A stretch of DNA of 45,558 bases from the NCBI RefSeq assembly GCF_001194135.2, contig NC_068995.1, positions 13,994,882 to 14,040,439 on the forward strand. Direction: 5' to 3'. The position numbers were made by a program, and so were the translations under genes. A model generated the notes under the pieces. The model saw only the letters and a program-made list of their open reading frames with translations, searched no databases and was not told where the DNA came from. Source of the stretch: Octopus bimaculoides (taxonomy: Eukaryota). Below, piece by piece: positions 16,462 to 44,189 of this stretch (positions are counted from its first letter, which is position 1; every line of letters starts with the position of its first letter).

Positions 16462-17012
16462 CCACCTTAAATTTTTTTTTAAATATTACACATGGTGGAA
16501 AGTCATAAAAATTAAGGATTTCTATTAAAAAAAACTTCATTTCTGTTTTATGTATATTTATGTCCCAATTTGCCTAACGCTAAGGCCTAAATCGCCTAAC
16601 TCTATGAAATTTACCAAAACTTGGGACATGAGTAGAAATTCTTAATTTTTATGACTTTCTCATCCTTATTAGTATAAGACATAATAAAAATAAATAAATG
16701 CGCCCTTTTTAAAGCCTAACTAGGCTCATGGGCACGGTTTCCCGGTTTCAATGGCATATGTGTTCCCCGGCTGGACGGGACGCCAGTCCATTGCAGAGTT
16801 ACTCATTTTTGCCAGCTGAGTGGACTGGACCAACGTGAAATGAAGTGTTTTGCTCAAGAACACAACGCGTTGCCAGGTCCAGGAATCGAAACCACAATCT
16901 TACGATCATGATTCTGACACCCTAACCACTAAGCCACGCACCGCCACATTATAAGACATAGGAAATCAATTTTCCACCATATGTAATATTAATAAAAAAA
17001 TTATAATGGTGG
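16462..17012. mobile_element. Foldback MITE interrupted by a SINE
   Basis: Inverted arm pairs 16482-16500/16972-16990 and 16498-16524/16633-16659, each with one mismatch. Confidence 0.7.
16684..16949 (-). mobile_element. Full-length SINE family C with 11-bp TSD
   Basis: TSD tataagacata at 16673-83 and 16950-60; tRNA-like head (reverse complement of ggaatcgaaacc...cctaaccactaagccacgc), CORE-like centre, (TTTA)n tail. Confidence 0.9.
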
Positions 17013-18692: not shown

Positions 18693-19712
18693 TATATATG
18701 TATAATATATATAAATATGTGTGTGTGTGTGTGCATACTCGCTCTCACACACACAACAAGAGTATTTCATAAAAATAGCCATTTATGTATTATACTTAAT
18801 GTAAATGCATCACGATATTTACGGCGGTATTCGTCCGGAGATAATATATCATATAGTCGTTCCGTGTTTAAAAACAATATGTATTGAAAAAAGGAGAAAT
18901 ATGTCACACCAACGCCAACGAGAACACGACATACGTTTCTGCCTGGTTGGGAGTTTCCAGTTTACATTATTCGGCCTGGTGTCCTCTAACGTAGAGAAAG
19001 CAACAATCAAGATGAGGACACTAGTCCAACAAACCTAAATAGAGTACATTTTCTTCTTTAATCTATATATTGCATATAACTGTATTCTTTGCTGCTTGTT
19101 CGTATTTCATTCTATTATATGTACAAGAATGTAAAATGAGAAAGCATGAATAATTATCATCATAATTGAGGGAAAATATACAAGTATGCATTTCATTTGA
19201 TAAAGCAATAGTTAAAAGAGGATTCTCATATTTAATACTGTGGGTGAAAAATATTTTAATGAATAATACTTATACGACGTGGATAAGAGATTAACTTAAT
19301 AGTTAATATTAATATGTCTGATTTTTGGTAAATATGGGGGACAACTCTAGAGATACTCCACTTAGTGATTGCATAGCCTCCCTTGATTTCCAGTAATGGA
19401 ATACGAAAGAATCTCTTTTTTTTTTTTTTTTTTTTTTTTTTNNNNNNNNNNNNNNNNNNNNNNNNNNNNNNNNNNNNNNNNNNNNNNNNNNNNNNNNNNN
19501 NNNNNNNNNNNNNNNNNNNNNNNNNNNNNNNNNNNNNNNNNNNNNNNNNNNNNNNNNNNNNNNNNNNNNNNNNNNNNNNNNNNNNNNNNNNNNNNNNNNN
19601 NNNNNNNNNNNNNNNNNNNNNNNNNNNNNNNNNNNNNNNNNNNNNNNNNNNNNNNNNNNNNNNNNNNNNNNNNNNNNNNNNNNNNNNNNNNNNNNNNNNN
19701 NNNNNNNNNNNN

Positions 19713-24950: not shown

Positions 24951-25149
24951 AACAGGTACACATACACATAAATATATATACATATCTGTATATATATCTG
25001 TCAAGTGTATATATATATATATATATATACACGACGGGTTTCTTTCAGTTTCCGTCTACCAAATCCACTCACAAGGCTTTGTTCGGCCCGAGGTTATTGT
25101 AGAAGAACCCGGAACCATGTGGTTGGGAAGCAAACTTAATGAAATAAAA

Positions 25150-26460: not shown

Positions 26461-26541
26461 CAATCTCTAATATTCACGAAATATTAGAAATAGTACATCA
26501 TTTTCAATGGACGGATAGGTGCCCTCACCTTGTTTGTTGCT

Positions 26542-26587
26542 GCCGCAACGTTTCGGTTGATGTACTCTCCAGCCTTCATCAGGCATT
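26542..26587 (-). ncRNA. Minimal PLE-type hammerhead ribozyme motif
   Basis: Minus strand: aaUGC-CUGAUGA-A-GGCUG-gagaguacau-CAACC-GAA-ACGU-U-GCG; palindromic ACGU stem III. Confidence 0.65.
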
Positions 26588-26699
26588 CTGGTGGAATTTC
26601 GAACCCAACCCTTTATTTGACTAACGGGGTACTTTGTTCTCATTCCTAATGTATTCTTTTTTACTGATGTTATTTTTTGTTGATATTATTTCTCAAGTT

Positions 26700-26765
26700 C
26701 TTGCTTGGGATTGAATTCAGAATCCTAGGGTTTGTAGCCCACGCTATTACCCACTACGCCCGTAG
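26700..26765 (-). promoter_or_regulatory. tRNA-like Pol III promoter remnant inside the PLE 3' region
   Basis: Minus strand ggcgtagtgggtaatagcgtgggctacaaaccctaggattctgaattcaatccc, homologous to the better-preserved A/B boxes at 42141-42195. Confidence 0.6.
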
Positions 26766-27642
26766 GCAATTACAGAGTGAATTTTTGGGCTTATAAGCCT
26801 AATATTTTATCTTTTCTTAATTCCCATATTATATTCATATCTGCATTAAGTCTTCTTAGGAGGTTATTGTGTCCTAGCATATATGCTGCCACTTTTAATT
26901 TTCGTATTTTCCAGTGGTATTCTCTGTCTATTGTTTTAACTTCATCCCACAGGGGGAGGTGGTCCCTGTTTCTCCATACCCGATTTTTCAATATCCCCTC
27001 GTGTCACAGCTTTATGATGTTCCTTTACTTCAAATTTTAAGGGGCCGACATGTTTCACCTTTGTACACCCTACCGCAACTGCATGGGATGGAGTACACGC
27101 AGTTTTTGGTCATATTCTCTTTTACGGATGGTTTTACTCGGAGGAGATATTTGCGAAGTGTTGTATTACTCCTGAATACTGCTCTGATGTCATTTGGACC
27201 GCATATCTTTTGTACCTTTTCCGAGAGGCCTTTGACATAGAGTAGAAAGACAGCGGTCAGTTTATGGATTTCATCCTCTCTCCTCTTCCTAATTGGAGTG
27301 GACAGCATGAACTACCCAGAAGACATTCTATCCACTCATTAAGGTGGCGAACTGGCAGAATCATTAACACTCCGTGTAATATGCTTAGCAGTATTTCGTC
27401 CGTCTTTATGCCTCCTTTCTCTTGGTGCCTATCTATCTGTCTGTCTGTCTGTCTGTATGTATGTATGTATGTATGTATGTATGCATGTCTGTATGTCTCT
27501 GTCTGTCTCTGTCTGTCTGTCTGTATGTCTCTCTTATAGTATGATGGCCAAATATCTACACGTTAATTTATGCATCAAATATCTGTATATGTACAGGTGA
27601 CTCTTAATTATTTATTATGTGAATTTATATACCAAATGTCAA

Positions 27643-27900
27643 AGGCGCATGGCCTAGTGGTTAGGGGTGTTGCATTCACGATCGTGAGATTGCGGTTTCG
27701 ATTCTCAGACCGACTGTGCGGTGTGCTCTTGAGCAAAAACACCTCATTCCACATTGCTCCAGACCACTCAGCTGTTAAATGGGTGACCCTGCAACGGTTC
27801 AGCCTTCCGATCAGTGTGAATATTGGCCTGTTCACCTGGCCAGCAAGGTGGCATAATTCGAAAGCTAAAATAATGCGAAGTGCATTGTGACCAGAGACAG
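27643..27900 (+). mobile_element. SINE family C-related copy
   Basis: ggcgcatggcctagtggttaggg...ggtttcgattc...cttgagcaaaaacacctcattccacattgctccag. Confidence 0.8.
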
Positions 27901-30161: not shown

Positions 30162-30604
30162 CTTTTACTAGTTCCAGTCCTTAGACTTCGGCCGTGCTGG
30201 TGCAGGGCTTTCAGGAATTTTGAATCGAATGAATCGACTCCAGGCCTTTTTTTTTTTTTTGTTCAGCCTGGTACTTATTCTATCGGTGTCTTTTACCAAA
30301 CCGCTATGCTATGGGCACGTAAACACACCATAGCTTAGTGGTTGTCAAACGCTGGTGGAGGGCAAACACAAACGTAAAGACACTCCACCACACACACACA
30401 CACACACGCAAACACACACGTGCGCGCGCACACACATATACACACACACGACAAGTTTCTTTCAGTTTCCATCTACCAAATTTACTCGTAAGGCTTTGGT
30501 CGGCCCCAGGCTATAATAAAAGACACTTGCCGAAGATACCACACAGTGAGACTGAACCGAGAACCATGCGGTTAGAAAGCAAACTTCTTCCCACACAGCC
30601 ATGC
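30162..30604 (-). mobile_element. Full-length SINE family B
   Basis: Tail, internal (CA)n and head, all in reverse complement. Confidence 0.85.
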
Positions 30605-41425: not shown

Positions 41426-42082
41426 GAGAGATAAAAAAAATTGAAAGAAAAAATCGTATGTACATATATACATACATACATACATAAATTCCGGTTTGAA
41501 CTGCAGTTGAACATGTGATCTTGTGACTGCTTTTCTAAAGCGGCTAAAAGTGAGGTATAGATTAAAGTAGAAATGAAAAGGCAAACGGCTTGACAAAACT
41601 TGACAAAGACTTTTAATTTAGCAATATAATAAAAAGGTTTACGTAGTCTCTAATAGCTGCTTCTAGAATATGTCAGCTGCTGGAACATCGTGTCGAGTGA
41701 GAATTCCATAGGCCGAGTATTCCATCAACGGAGAGAGATAAGTTAAACATATGTAACAGTGGAAGAATATTCCTCATCAATGATATCATTGTGGTTCATT
41801 TTGTCTAGAAAAGGAGGAGAAATCCAGTTAAAAATCCAATCAAAATAGGTATTTATTAGGTAAATTTATGAACAAATGAACAAAATCGATGTCTTTTAGT
41901 AGAATCGAAACAGAGAGAATGGCTTGATTATAATCCATGGCGAGGGATGTTAGCAAAGAAGAGAATTTTATTAATATAATTTTATTAATATAATAAAAAA
42001 TATAATTTTATTAACATAATTTTATTAATATAATAAAAAGTAACCAGAAGATATTATTAGTATAATAAAAGAAAAATAATAT

Positions 42083-42375
42083 TACAGTTCTATATTTACG
42101 AGATATGGAATTATGTACATTATTTACATCTACGGGCATATAGCGTAGTGGTTAAGAGCGCCGGCTACTAACCCCAAGATTCCGAGTTCGATTCCAAGCA
42201 GTGACCTGAATAATAAAAATGATAATAGCATCGAAAAATACCTTAGGAATGAGAACCCAGGTTCAAAATTTCCCCAAGACACCTGATGAAGGCTGGAGTG
42301 TATATCAACCGAAACGTTGTATTAACAACAAACAAGATGAAGACAAATATCTATCAAATGTAAATAATGTAAATA
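42083..42375 (+). mobile_element. ORF-less PLE terminal module: tRNA-like head plus hammerhead, with 14-bp inverted ends
   Basis: A-box tagcgtagtgg 42141, B-box gagttcgattcc 42184-95, HHR 42278-42323; tacattatttacat 42116-29 / atgtaaataatgta 42358-71; colinear with 26490-26765. Confidence 0.8.
42278..42323 (+). ncRNA. Minimal PLE-type hammerhead ribozyme motif
   Basis: GACAC-CUGAUGA-A-GGCUG-gaguguauau-CAACC-GAA-ACGU-U-GUAUU. Confidence 0.65.
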
Positions 42376-44189
42376 ATGAAAAATGATATATTTATTACTA
42401 AAAATCCAGAAAAGATCGTAAAAATAGAGCAGAAATAACAAACTGAAACTAAATTAAAGTTTTTAGAGACAATGTTTATAAAATATAGGATTTGATACCG
42501 ACAACAGAAATATGAACAATATTAAATTAAAATTTTTTTAGACATTTGAAGATATAAGTAAATATTTTTTTAAAATTCATAAAATGTATGGAAGACAATG
42601 AAAATAAAATTAATATAAATAAAACAGTTTTCTAAGAAGACAAAGGAGATTTATTAAGATATCTACTAGTTACTTTATAATTGTATTACTAAAATTCCCT
42701 TCCTTTTGTTAGAAAATGGTTTTATTATGTTGTATTAATTTTATTATTATTGTCTTCCATAACTTTTAAGATTCAATTTAAATATTGACTTTGCGTTCTT
42801 GAAACGTTACGTCGAGACTAGTATTTAACAAGGATTTTTCTCTCATCTGATGAGGAGGCTTAATTTCTGCACGGTTTTAAAGGATTATCTATATTAATGC
42901 AGACAATGTAAGCAATTTATTTAATATAAGCAATTTATTTATTATCAAATATAACAAAATAACTTATCTTTACACGCTTTAAGTTATGAAACAATTTGTT
43001 GTGATATATGAATTTTCCAGTGGTTAAATAAATTTCATCATACGATTTCTCTCGTATATATANNNNNNNNNNNNNNNNNNNNNNNNNNNNNNNNNNNNNN
43101 NNNNNNNNNNNNNNNNNNNNNNNNNNNNNNNNNNNNNNNNNNNNNNNNNNNNNNNNNNNNNNNNNNNNNNNNNNNNNNNNNNNNNNNNNNNNNNNNNNNN
43201 NNNNNNNNNNNNNNNNNNNNNNNNNNNNNNNNNNNNNNNNNNNNNNNNNNNNNNNNNNNNNNNNNNNNNNNNNNNNNNNNNNNNNNNNNNNNNNNNNNNN
43301 NNNNNNNNNNNNNNNNNNNNNNNNNNNNNNNNNNNNNNNNNNNNNNNNNNNNNNNNNNNNNNNNNNNNNNNNNNNNNNNNNNNNNNNNNNNNNNNNNNNN
43401 NNNNNNNNNNNNNNNNNNNNNGATCTTATATATATATATGTATACATATATGTATATATGTATATGTGTATGTATGTATGTATGTATGTATTTGTGTCCA
43501 TAACACAAGGTTGATTTCGGAGAAAGGTATCGTTGATTATAGTGACTCCAGTTCATTTAGGTAGGAATTTTTATTTTATCAGTTCCTCGTAGGATGATTG
43601 AAGTGCCCTCGGTGGGTTCTGGATCCCTGCTAAAATAATATAGGGATTTCTGATATAGGTATAAGGTCAGAAATTTGGTGAGAGGGTGGAGGAGGCTGAG
43701 GGAATAAGCAGTCATTTCGACCTAAATAAATGGCTGTTGCTTTATTTTACGGACTTCAAAAAGATTCAGAGGAGAGTCGATCTCAGCAGGCTTTGAGCTT
43801 AGAAAGTAAAACGTTGGCATTTTCTACGGTGTAACAACGTGTTTCGGTTGGAGCTGATGCATATCTGTTTCTAAGTAATGTAAATTTCTCGAATGAATTG
43901 AAAGAAAATAATAAAAAGTTTTTTGGCAGGAAATATCAATATTTTAGAATCACAAAACCGAATCGGCAGAGTCGACAAAATGGCTGACGATAAATAAACA
44001 GTATTGTTACAGAGAAAATGAACCGGATTTTAGTCCTTCTCACAACGTACTATAAATCTGTGTTCTGAAATACATTGCCATCAACAAGTAGTATTGATTG
44101 ATCGATTACGAAAAGAGAAAAAATAACAATAGCCAAGTGCTCACAATAGCTAGTAATTAGTCACGTCAAGAGCAAAACGACTATCTGAA

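What the first reader, a model, noticed from the sequence alone, without database searches (positions are those of the whole stretch)
42083..42375. Free-standing tRNA-head plus hammerhead unit: candidate PLE-mobilised SINE or retrozyme
Seen: the same module as 26490-26765 but with no ORF, cleaner A and B boxes, an intact hammerhead core and 14-bp inverted ends (42116-29 / 42358-71). The two copies differ by a ~27-bp indel between the B box and the ribozyme. Stem I covaries between the copies: AC/GU here vs GC/GC in the PLE copy, an A-U to G-C swap at the second pair. Inference: the module spreads independently as a non-autonomous, Pol III-driven, self-cleaving retro-unit using PLE RT/endonuclease in trans. 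The short inverted 5' copy of the 3' end matches the inverted-pLTR junctions typical of PLE insertion.
Basis: partly seen in the sequence, partly recalled or inferred. Interest (0 to 1): 0.85.

Follow-up and report, generated by a model that had tools for sequence, protein, structure and literature searches.

The report
Octopus Penelope-derived tRNA-headed hammerhead SINE copy
This 250-bp stretch is an old, non-coding copy of the tail end of an octopus Penelope-like retrotransposon; the tail carries a tRNA-derived promoter-like head and a minimal hammerhead ribozyme motif, and some copies start exactly at that head, which suggests it also spreads on its own as a SINE.

Summary
Window 42130-42377(+) and 26765-26494(-) are two diverged copies of one module: a tRNA-derived head with A and B boxes, a body, a Penelope-type minimal hammerhead (HHR) motif and a 3' end. 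The window is octopod DNA.

In five ORF-linked copies from two Penelope-like element (PLE) lineages, the whole module, tRNA head included, lies directly 3' of the RT/endonuclease ORF. It is therefore the PLE's own 3'UTR/pLTR, not a separate unit sitting next to a PLE.

- Of 7 copies sampled without regard to the ORF, 3 begin within 4 nt of the head start (solo42, L011, L008), 11-16 nt upstream of the A box.
- Five of 14 junction-spanning database peptides break at the same place.
- All other copies are truncated at scattered positions.
- The head-start copies carry short inverted fragments of the element at their 5' junction, which is typical of PLE insertion.

A PLE-mobilised SINE-like class is thus supported structurally. 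Pol III transcription and self-cleavage remain untested. The window copy's HHR is not predicted to adopt the hammerhead fold, and it is single, so this copy is not a retrozyme.

Closest known are schistosome Sm-alpha, PLE min-HHRs and animal retrozymes. I rate it a new variant of a known kind, of moderate interest.

The parts
42110..42129 (+). Left inverted arm: a reverse-complement copy of the element's last 20 nt, abutting the head start. This is a PLE-type 5' junction piece.
   Evidence: I5: 20 nt, 95% complementary to 42358-42377. Analogous inverted pieces at 5' junctions in L011, L007, L010, L005 and L004.
42130..42377 (+). Solo non-coding copy of the PLE 3' module (head + body + min-HHR + 3' terminal region). 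Homology to the PLE-linked copy starts at CTACGG (42130).
   Evidence: The upstream flank shows no similarity to the PLE UTR (p=0.76).
42134..42206 (+). tRNA-derived head. A box TAGCGTAGTGG at 42141-42151; B box AGTTCGATTCC at 42185-42195. No cloverleaf.
   Evidence: z 11.4 against shuffles. Negative.
42207..42279 (+). Body, including the conserved block TTAGGAATGAGAAC (42243-42256). It lacks a 27-nt segment and a 10-nt segment that are present in all PLE-linked copies.
42280..42321 (+). PLE-type minimal type-I hammerhead motif. Helix I 5' strand ..AC; CUGAUGA 42283-89; unpaired A 42290; helix II 42291-42310 (GGCUGG/UCAACC with a C.A mismatch); GAAA 42311-14; CGUU 42315-18 (palindrome AACGUU 42313-18); predicted cleavage after 42318; helix I 3' strand GU.
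   Evidence: Sequence reading; pair counts; fold; description of PLE min-HHRs in PMC4209133. No Rfam match.
42322..42377 (+). 3' terminal region shared with PLE copies (…AAGATGAAGACAA…AATGATGTA), including the right inverted arm 42358-42377.
26494..26765 (-). The same module directly 3' of a PLE ORF remnant. Head starts at 26765; HHR CUGAUGA…GAAA at 26582-26551; a possible tail runs down to about 26455.
26791..27308 (-). 5'-truncated, frameshifted C-terminal (endonuclease) part of a PLE ORF with the motif CVYSIPCSCGRVYKGETCRPLK. It is bordered upstream by microsatellite.
   Evidence: 108 homologues, with named hits from Octopus sinensis and O. vulgaris. RVT_1 lies upstream in the homologues P0062 and L012.
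18960..19045 (+). Third, short and degenerate fragment of the same PLE 3' end (post-HHR region).

Best explanation
The element at 42130-42377 is a non-autonomous, SINE-like copy of the 3'-terminal module of an octopus Penelope-like element (PLE).

Shown:
- In this PLE clade the 3'UTR/pLTR consists of a tRNA-derived head with Pol III-type A and B boxes, a ~100-nt body, a minimal type-I hammerhead motif and a ~55-90-nt 3' end.
- Some copies begin at the head start.
- The junctions of those copies carry inverted fragments of the element.

Inferred mechanism:
1. RNA polymerase III (or some other start fixed at this point) initiates 11-16 nt upstream of the A box, in a PLE copy or in an earlier solo copy.
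2. The short transcript runs through the hammerhead to the PLE 3' end.
3. The PLE RT/GIY-YIG endonuclease recognises that 3' end in trans and copies the RNA into the genome by target-primed reverse transcription.
4. The RT reaches the true 5' end of the RNA and then switches template. This leaves the short inverted piece at 42110-42129.

The hammerhead is inherited baggage in this copy. In the PLE life cycle it probably trims tandem or read-through transcripts as a dimer. One near-full-length PLE (L012) has an upstream repeat that starts at the predicted cleavage site. The window copy itself is old, diverged and most likely inactive.
For: 1. The module lies directly 3' of the PLE ORF in window 26k, L001, L002, L003 and L006, with homology across head, body and HHR in two lineages about 60% identical at protein level.

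2. 5'-end census, in coordinates of reference L001:10001-11500 with the head start at ~1186. The six peptide-targeted copies, chosen without regard to what lies upstream, start at <=61, 907, 1090, 1183, 1186 and 1299. Solo42 starts at the homologous position. That makes 3 of 7 within 4 nt. My rough estimate of the chance probability is 0.002-0.03 for a pre-specified 15-nt window.

3. Independent peptide proxy. Of 14 ORFs spanning the head, 5 diverge from the element right at its start (P0229, P0230, P0231, P0233, P0135). Five or six are truncated at scattered points inside the head. Two read on into the PLE UTR.

4. The 5' ends lie 11 nt (solo42), 13 nt (L011) and 16 nt (L008) upstream of the A box. 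This is the usual distance for tRNA-type Pol III starts (established knowledge).

5. The A-box pattern is enriched in the window (4 hits against 0.34 expected), and the head resembles tRNA at z = 11.4.

6. PLE-type insertion scars are present: inverted pieces at the 5' junctions of solo42, L011, L007, L010, L005 and L004; a ~33-nt tail; microsatellite targets. They match the description in PMC8557442.

7. The HHR matches the published PLE min-HHR: unpaired nucleotide 5' of helix II, short helix I, no helix III, palindromic ACGU (PMC4209133). Helix II is paired in 96.7% of cells, with CG to UA changes in 3 sequences.
Against: - The sample is small: 7 DNA copies and 14 peptides.
- L008's exact 5' end is less certain. 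An upstream 17-mer duplication loosely resembles the UTR (test p=0.17).
- There are no expression data, so Pol III use is inferred only.
- A hairpin or palindrome at the head start (TGTCC-AGCA-GGACA, CCAGCTGG) could instead be a hot spot for RT stalling or template switching.
- L008 and L011 do not cluster apart from PLE-linked copies, so no independent SINE master lineage is shown.
- No clear target-site duplication was found (only TATATTTA at 42091-98 / 42387-94, in AT-rich DNA).
- The head does not fold as a tRNA.
- The absence of T4 runs in the module is no more than chance expects.
- The solo HHR is not predicted to fold.
- The endonuclease domain was identified by reading its motif only. 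Pfam gave no GIY-YIG hit, and the AlphaFold model was too poor to use.
Confidence: 0.58

Rival explanations
1. It is an ordinary dead-on-arrival, 5'-truncated PLE insertion. Reverse transcription of a full PLE RNA simply stopped, or switched template, near the tRNA-like head. The head has no promoter role and the unit never propagated by itself.
For: - Most other short copies are truncated at scattered positions: reference 907, 1090, 1299, 1381, 1395, 1456.
- The whole unit is contained in the PLE 3'UTR.
- Published surveys attribute dispersed single min-HHRs to truncated PLEs (PMC4209133).
- The head-start copies do not form their own clade.
- A hairpin or palindrome at the head start could act as an RT stop or switch site.
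- A second recurrent breakpoint at the B box shows that hot spots exist.
Against: - Three of 7 DNA copies and 5 of 14 peptide junctions coincide within a few nt, in two diverged lineages.
- They do so exactly where a Pol III start is expected relative to the A box.
- The solo copy keeps better A and B boxes than the ORF-linked copy.
Confidence: 0.27
2. The discrete 5' end marks the PLE's own transcription start inside its terminal repeat, driven by Pol II from a promoter upstream of the start. Solo copies would then be retrocopies of short pLTR transcripts and would lack a promoter they can carry with them. The A/B boxes would be relics of a captured tRNA or SINE.
For: - PLE transcripts are known to start inside the upstream pLTR (review PMC6765202).
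- The tRNA-like head has lost its cloverleaf.
- The solos are interspersed with PLE-linked copies in the tree.
Against: - In the one near-full-length copy seen (L012), the upstream repeat is only 90 nt and starts at the HHR site. It does not contain the head.
- The A and B boxes are conserved across lineages at the right spacing from the 5' end.
Confidence: 0.1
3. It is a retrozyme unit: a hammerhead-bounded repeat that is transcribed, self-cleaves, circularises and is copied back as tandem arrays.
For: - Tandem 129-nt HHR units exist in the same family (L007 10087-10439, 2.7 copies).
- Several database peptides carry 2-3 such units.
- Animal retrozymes have been proposed to derive from PLE pLTRs (bioRxiv 10.64898/2026.07.22.740005).
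Against: - The window copy has one HHR only, and no tandem repeat surrounds it.
- The tandem unit elsewhere starts just 5' of the HHR and excludes the tRNA head.
- The solo HHR is not predicted to fold.
Confidence: 0.05

Closest known systems
Sm-alpha / Sj-alpha SINE-like retroposons of schistosomes (Ferbeyre et al. 1998; Laha et al. 2000; summarised in PMC6765202 and PMC8490949)
   Same: Both are short, non-coding, dispersed repeats with a Pol III-type promoter followed by a type-I hammerhead with a very short stem III.
   Different: - The Sm-alpha hammerhead is canonical and cleaves well in vitro. Here it is the PLE minimal variant, with a 2-3 bp helix I.
- No autonomous partner is established for Sm-alpha. 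Here the whole unit is the 3'UTR of a PLE.
- The hosts belong to different phyla.
- Sequence homology was not tested, because I had no Sm-alpha sequence.
Minimal hammerheads in pLTRs of Penelope-like elements, and their dispersed single copies (Cervera & de la Pena 2014, PMC4209133; Lunse et al. 2017)
   Same: Same ribozyme architecture (unpaired nucleotide 5' of a long helix II, short helix I, no helix III, palindromic ACGU for dimer formation). Same location in the PLE terminal repeat. Many solo copies.
   Different: - Those reports attribute solo motifs to truncated PLEs and, in the text I read, mention no tRNA-derived head.
- Here a tRNA-derived A/B-box head lies upstream of the HHR, and a class of copies starts at it.
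Metazoan non-LTR retrozymes (Cervera & de la Pena 2020, PMC7229834; Li et al. 2026 preprint)
   Same: Non-autonomous, HHR-bearing, and proposed to be derived from and mobilised by PLEs.
   Different: - Retrozymes are tandem repeats of 170-400 nt expressed as circular RNA.
- The window unit is single, has a tRNA-type head and a defined 5' end.
- Tandem 129-nt units in the same family lack the head.
Classical tRNA-derived SINEs with a LINE-derived 3' tail (Ohshima & Okada model; octopus OK, OR1, OR2)
   Same: A tRNA-derived head with internal promoter boxes at the 5' end, and a 3' part shared with an autonomous retroelement.
   Different: - The partner is a PLE, not a LINE.
- The partner contains the entire SINE, head included, rather than the tail only.
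- Insertions carry inverted junction pieces instead of simple target-site duplications.
- Whether this family equals a described octopus SINE could not be checked. OR1 or OR2 is a CORE-SINE (PMC4758252 and PMC4824008 disagree on which), and this unit has no CORE domain.

Membership tests
tRNA-derived SINE | 5' head related to tRNA, with A and B boxes | tested here: met
   A box exact at 42141-51. B box 10/11 at 42185-95. No cloverleaf, which is common in SINE heads.
tRNA-derived SINE | Copies begin at the head, at a Pol III-compatible start | tested here: met
   Solo42, L011 and L008 start 11-16 nt 5' of the A box. Five of 14 peptide junctions fall at the same point. The sample is small, and many other copies are truncated elsewhere.
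tRNA-derived SINE | Short, non-coding, with the 3' part shared with an autonomous retroelement | tested here: met
   248 bp. There is no real ORF; open frames in the repeat are artefacts. The full length is shared with the PLE 3'UTR.
tRNA-derived SINE | Transcribed by RNA polymerase III | not testable with these tools
   No expression or ChIP data. The absence of T4 runs is not significant.
tRNA-derived SINE | Own amplifying lineage (subfamilies distinct from the partner) | tested here: inconclusive
   L008 and L011 are interspersed among PLE-linked copies (9 sequences). Solo42 has private 27-nt and 10-nt deletions relative to all linked copies, but no sister solo copies were available.
Penelope-like element (3' end / pLTR) | Single ORF with RT followed by a C-terminal GIY-YIG endonuclease | tested here: inconclusive
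   RVT_1 hits on P0062 and on the L012 ORF. The endonuclease was recognised only by reading the CVYSIPCSCG..YKGET..R.L…EH motif. No Pfam GIY-YIG hit, and the structure model had pLDDT 48.
Penelope-like element (3' end / pLTR) | Hammerhead motif in the terminal repeat | tested here: met
   Present in every complete 3' end. The upstream 90-nt repeat in L012 starts at the HHR site.
Penelope-like element (3' end / pLTR) | Insertions with partial tandems, inverted 5'-truncated copies, a 30-40 bp tail and microsatellite targets | tested here: met
   compared with PMC8557442.
Hammerhead ribozyme, type I minimal (PLE) variant | Conserved core CUGANGA … GAAA with a cleavage-site H | tested here: met
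   42283-89, 42311-14, U at 42318. The same core is present in 26k and in most related copies; some decayed copies carry core mutations.
Hammerhead ribozyme, type I minimal (PLE) variant | Helices I and II supported by pairing and covariation | tested here: inconclusive
   Helix II: 96.7% of cells paired and one pair with CG to UA in 3 sequences. Helix I: only 3 bp, with one compensatory change. Covariation score 0.158 against 0.125 in shuffles (8/500). The window copies have a C.A mismatch and no hammerhead minimum-free-energy fold.
Hammerhead ribozyme, type I minimal (PLE) variant | Match to curated Rfam hammerhead models | tested here: not met
   No hit at gathering score or at E<=10.
Hammerhead ribozyme, type I minimal (PLE) variant | Self-cleavage | not testable with these tools
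   Published PLE min-HHRs cleave weakly and only as dimers (PMC4209133).
Non-LTR retrozyme | Tandem repeats, each unit with an HHR | tested here: not met
   There is a single HHR at 42.2 kb and no tandem. The feature is met elsewhere in the family (L007), but there without the tRNA head.
Sm-alpha-type HHR SINE | Canonical hammerhead with loop-loop contacts; sequence homology to Sm-alpha | not tested
   No Sm-alpha sequence was held and Ferbeyre 1998 is not in the library. By architecture, the HHR here is the minimal variant, not the canonical one.

The most novel reading that the evidence does not exclude
Octopus Penelope-like elements carry a working tRNA-type Pol III gene inside their own 3'UTR. 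Every PLE copy, and every solo copy, would then be a source of short transcripts that end in the PLE 3' recognition region, and the PLE machinery would copy these back into the genome.

That would be the first SINE family partnered with a PLE rather than a LINE. Its whole sequence would be nested in its partner. It would link the Sm-alpha type 'Pol III promoter + hammerhead' elements, PLE minimal hammerheads and animal retrozymes into one origin story. It might also account for part of the large pool of unclassified octopus SINEs.
Probability: 0.35. Interest if true: 0.72.

Novelty: new variant of a known kind. Interest (0 to 1): 0.55.

Why it matters
- SINEs are defined by their partnership with LINEs, and PLEs are the least understood class of retrotransposons. 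A tRNA-headed, PLE-mobilised SINE would extend the SINE concept to a third retroelement class.
- It would supply an origin for hammerhead-bearing SINE-like repeats.
- It would give a tractable substrate for studying how the PLE RT recognises its template: about 250-350 nt, with a defined 5' end and a defined 3' recognition region.
- SINEs are the largest repeat class in Octopus (11.6% of O. vulgaris, mostly unclassified; PMC13282606). Knowing which machinery moves them bears on how these genomes expanded.
- There is a practical side for databases. About 3100 'proteins' in the public collection are translations of this non-coding repeat.

Tried and rejected
- **Rfam and ARAGORN.** Rfam was searched at gathering score and at E<=10 on the whole window, on 701-nt stretches and on 91-101-nt stretches. 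ARAGORN was run on the window and on all 12 loci. No tRNA and no hammerhead was reported. Both motifs are therefore below the reach of the curated models, and the claims rest on motif reading, homology and pair counts.
- **Metagenome scan.** An exact-pattern scan of metagenome contigs for the HHR found 0 hits.
- **Pfam on the endonuclease domain.** No GIY-YIG hit even at E<=10.
- **AlphaFold on the endonuclease domain.** With a 27-sequence alignment, mean pLDDT was 48. That is too poor, so no fold search was run.
- **T4-run avoidance as a Pol III signature.** Nine of 11 copies have none, but only about 0.66 runs per copy are expected, and the copies share ancestry. Not informative.
- **Possible extension of L008 into the PLE UTR.** Suspected by eye, not supported by nhmmer at maximum sensitivity or by a shuffle test (p=0.17). 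Kept as a caveat.
- **Identity with the described octopus SINEs OK, OR1 and OR2.** Could not be checked. The 1994 paper is not held, and two later papers disagree on whether OR1 or OR2 is the CORE-SINE.
- **Papers not held.** Ferbeyre 1998 and Lunse 2017.
- **Target-site duplication.** Only an 8-nt AT-rich repeat was found (TATATTTA 42091-98 / 42387-94). It was not treated as evidence.
- **Ratio of module peptides to endonuclease peptides.** 3100 against 108. Rejected as a census, because the two searches differ in sensitivity.

Full report
**What is in the window.**
The window is AT-rich (33% GC) draft eukaryotic sequence with 11 runs of N. Two stretches are homologous: 42130-42358 on the plus strand and 26759-26494 on the minus strand (66.5% identity, blastn E 3e-23; alignments).

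Reading 5' to 3', each copy has four parts:
- a tRNA-like head,
- a body of about 70-100 nt,
- a hammerhead-like motif,
- a 3' region of about 55 nt.

In the solo copy the A box is exact (TAGCGTAGTGG, 42141-51). That pattern occurs 4 times in the window against 0.34 expected; the other three hits belong to other SINE-like heads. The B box matches 10 of 11 positions (42185-95).

The head resembles real tRNA genes over about 70 nt (z = 11.4 against shuffles). The head is not a foldable tRNA:
- ARAGORN finds no tRNA in the window or in any related locus.
- Rfam finds no tRNA even at E<=10 on a 91-nt query.

**The hammerhead motif.**
The motif reads CUGAUGA, A, GGCUGGAGUGUAUAUCAACC, GAAA, CGUU, then G. 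It has an unpaired base 5' of a long helix II, a helix I of only 2-3 bp, no helix III, and a palindromic AACGUU.

This is the 'minimal' hammerhead described for Penelope-like elements, which is thought to act as a dimer and cleaves poorly in vitro (PMC4209133; review PMC6765202). Rfam's hammerhead models do not match it.

Pair counts over 15 related copies:
- Helix II is paired in 96.7% of cells. One pair changes CG to UA in three sequences and to UG in four.
- Helix I is 3 bp, with a single compensatory change.
- The overall covariation score is modest: 0.158 against 0.125 in shuffles, with 8 of 500 shuffles as high.

A young copy (L008) folds into the hammerhead shape as its minimum-free-energy structure (-12.1 kcal/mol). 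The window's solo copy does not (-5.1 kcal/mol, z +0.63), because helix II carries a C.A mismatch. 'Intact core' is therefore true at the level of the conserved letters, but this copy is a poor candidate for a working ribozyme.

**Organism and partner element.**
Directly upstream of the 26k copy, on the minus strand, lies a frameshifted, 5'-truncated ORF remnant (27308 to 26791). It carries the motif CVYSIPCSCGRVYKGETCRPLK.

A database search returned 108 homologues. The named ones are from Octopus sinensis and O. vulgaris. Longer homologues carry an RT domain (RVT_1) upstream.

I read the C-terminal motif as the GIY-YIG endonuclease of Penelope-like elements, from established knowledge of that family. 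I could not confirm it with tools:
- Pfam gave no hit.
- The structure model was too poor to use (pLDDT 48).

Three other lines of evidence point to a PLE:
- the minimal hammerhead,
- the insertion architecture described below,
- the reported abundance of Penelope elements in Octopus (PMC13282606, PMC8967140).

**The module is the PLE's own 3' end.**
I fetched 12 octopod loci (224 kb, all from one ENA assembly) through proteins found in the searches. The full module directly follows the ORF in every locus where the PLE 3' end is complete: L001, L002, L003, L006 and the window's 26k copy. L010 and L012 show the same arrangement.

The tRNA-like head sits at the same place in two PLE lineages that are only about 60% identical in protein. 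Homologous UTR sequence flanks it on both sides (…TTATAAGCCCAAAAATTCAC.CTG.AATTG upstream, GGAATSAGAAC downstream).

So the head was already part of the 3'UTR in the ancestor of these lineages. The 26k copy is not 'a SINE module plus an ORF'. It is simply a PLE 3' end.

**Is the solo copy more than a truncated PLE?**
I sampled copies without regard to what lies upstream by using spurious peptides translated from the hammerhead region (3100 database hits). I then mapped each copy onto a reference, L001:10001-11500, in which the head starts at about 1186.

The six sampled copies begin at:

| Copy | Start (reference coordinate) |
|---|---|
| L012 | <=61 |
| L010 | 907 |
| L007 | 1090 |
| L008 | 1183 |
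| L011 | 1186 |
| L009 | 1299 |

. The window's solo copy begins at the homologous position (CTACGG against CCAGCAGG).

L011 and solo42 are firm, because each abuts an inverted piece of the element itself. L008 is somewhat less certain.

Three of seven copies within 4 nt is unlikely under scattered truncation. My rough estimate is 0.002-0.03 for a pre-specified 15-nt window. This figure was not produced by a tool.

A second, independent proxy agrees. Among 14 database ORFs that read across the head:
- five diverge from the element right at its start,
- five or six begin at scattered points inside the head,
- two read on into the PLE UTR. These are visible only because a stop codon there had mutated.

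The shared start lies 11, 13 and 16 nt upstream of the A box. That is where tRNA-type Pol III promoters initiate (established knowledge).

The picture is therefore a mixture: ordinary random 5' truncations, plus a discrete class that starts at the tRNA-like head.

**How the copies were inserted.**
The solo copy's left arm (42110-42129) is a 19/20 reverse-complement copy of its own last 20 nt. Comparable inverted pieces sit at the 5' junctions of L011, L007, L010, L005 and L004.

Young copies also carry a ~33-nt tail, and several insertions lie in microsatellites. Craig et al. describe these same features for PLE insertions (PMC8557442).

**Retrozyme reading.**
Tandem arrays of a 129-nt unit (hammerhead + 3' end + tail) exist in the family:
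- L007 has 2.7 copies at 94% identity.
- Several database peptides carry 2-3 such units.

These arrays fit the recent proposal that animal retrozymes derive from PLE terminal repeats. However, the tandem unit excludes the tRNA head, and the window's solo copy has a single hammerhead with no tandem. The retrozyme label therefore does not apply to this finding.

**Most likely mechanism and its limits.**
Shown:
- homology of the whole unit to the PLE 3'UTR,
- a discrete 5' terminus at the head,
- PLE-type junctions,
- conservation of the A/B boxes and of helix II.

Inferred:
- a Pol III start at the head,
- read-through to the PLE 3' end,
- recognition of that end by the PLE RT/endonuclease in trans,
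- template switching at the RNA 5' end to give the inverted piece.

Against an independent SINE lineage:
- The two head-start copies of the well-sampled lineage do not cluster together. They may be spawned repeatedly from PLE copies rather than from SINE master genes.
- A small hairpin or palindrome at the head start could be an RT stall site.
- No expression data exist.

I put the SINE-like reading at about 0.58, plain truncation at about 0.27, a PLE-own Pol II start at about 0.10, and a retrozyme at about 0.05.

**Comparison with what is known.**
- The architecture 'Pol III promoter + hammerhead' is known from schistosome Sm-alpha elements (PMC6765202, PMC8490949).
- Minimal hammerheads in PLE repeats, and their many solo copies, are known (PMC4209133).
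- PLE-derived non-autonomous hammerhead repeats have been proposed (PMC7229834 and the 2026 preprint).

In the papers I could search I found no report of two things: a tRNA-derived head inside a PLE 3'UTR, and a class of copies starting at it. In other words, I found no described SINE whose partner is a PLE and whose whole sequence is nested in that partner.

The search was limited to open papers, and I could not consult repeat libraries. The family may already be catalogued under another name.

I rate it a new variant of a known kind, of moderate interest. The window copy itself is old and probably inert.

Noticed in passing
window 27620-27900 (+) and 16700-16945 (-): Two copies of a different tRNA-headed SINE with a CORE-like central domain (…GTGCTCTTGAGCAAAAACAC…CTCAGCTG..AAATGGGT). 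Each has an exact A box. One abuts the truncation point of the 26k PLE remnant.
   Followed up: partly
window 18960-19045 (+): A third, short and degenerate fragment of the same PLE 3' end (the region after the hammerhead).
   Followed up: partly
L007 10087-10439: 2.7 tandem copies of a 129-nt unit made of the minimal hammerhead, the 3' end and the tail (94% identity). Database peptides P0109-P0117, P0123 and P0129 also carry 2-3 such units. This is a retrozyme-like minisatellite born from the PLE end.
   Followed up: partly
L012 7424-7513: A near-full-length PLE has an upstream terminal repeat of only 90 nt. It begins at GAAACGTT|GTG, the predicted hammerhead cleavage site, next to a (CA)n(TA)n(GA)n microsatellite. 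This fits an RNA 5' end made by ribozyme cleavage.
   Followed up: partly
Protein database: About 3100 predicted 'proteins' are translations of the open frame that happens to run through this non-coding repeat (…TPEEGRRTYRPKRCGNNNKDEDNS…). This is an annotation artefact.
   Followed up: yes
L011 9819-9865; peptides P0237, P0238: A second recurrent breakpoint lies at the B box (reference ~1250). Two truncated copies start there, and L011's inverted junction piece ends there.
   Followed up: no
L008 9871-9884, L001 11187-11194; window 42127-42138: The head start carries a small hairpin or palindrome (TGTCC-AGCA-GGACA and CCAGCTGG; GCC-TAC-GGC in the window lineage). This could matter for how the 5' end is formed.
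   Followed up: no
Peptides P0135 and P0232: Both begin with MSSGLLQVFV. This back-translates to the reverse complement of the hammerhead core region, suggesting an inverted hammerhead fragment placed against the head start. No DNA was seen for these.
   Followed up: no
window 30331-30450 and 25040-25100 / 30450-30530: Another A-box hit lies next to a long (CA)n tract. A further unclassified repeat (…CAAGTTTCTTTCAGTTTCCATCTACCAAATTTACTCGTAAGGCTTTGGTCGGCCC…) is present at least twice.
   Followed up: no
window 41955-42081: An AT-rich 40-nt tandem and palindromic low-complexity tract lies immediately upstream of the solo insertion. This fits the reported PLE preference for simple repeats.
   Followed up: no
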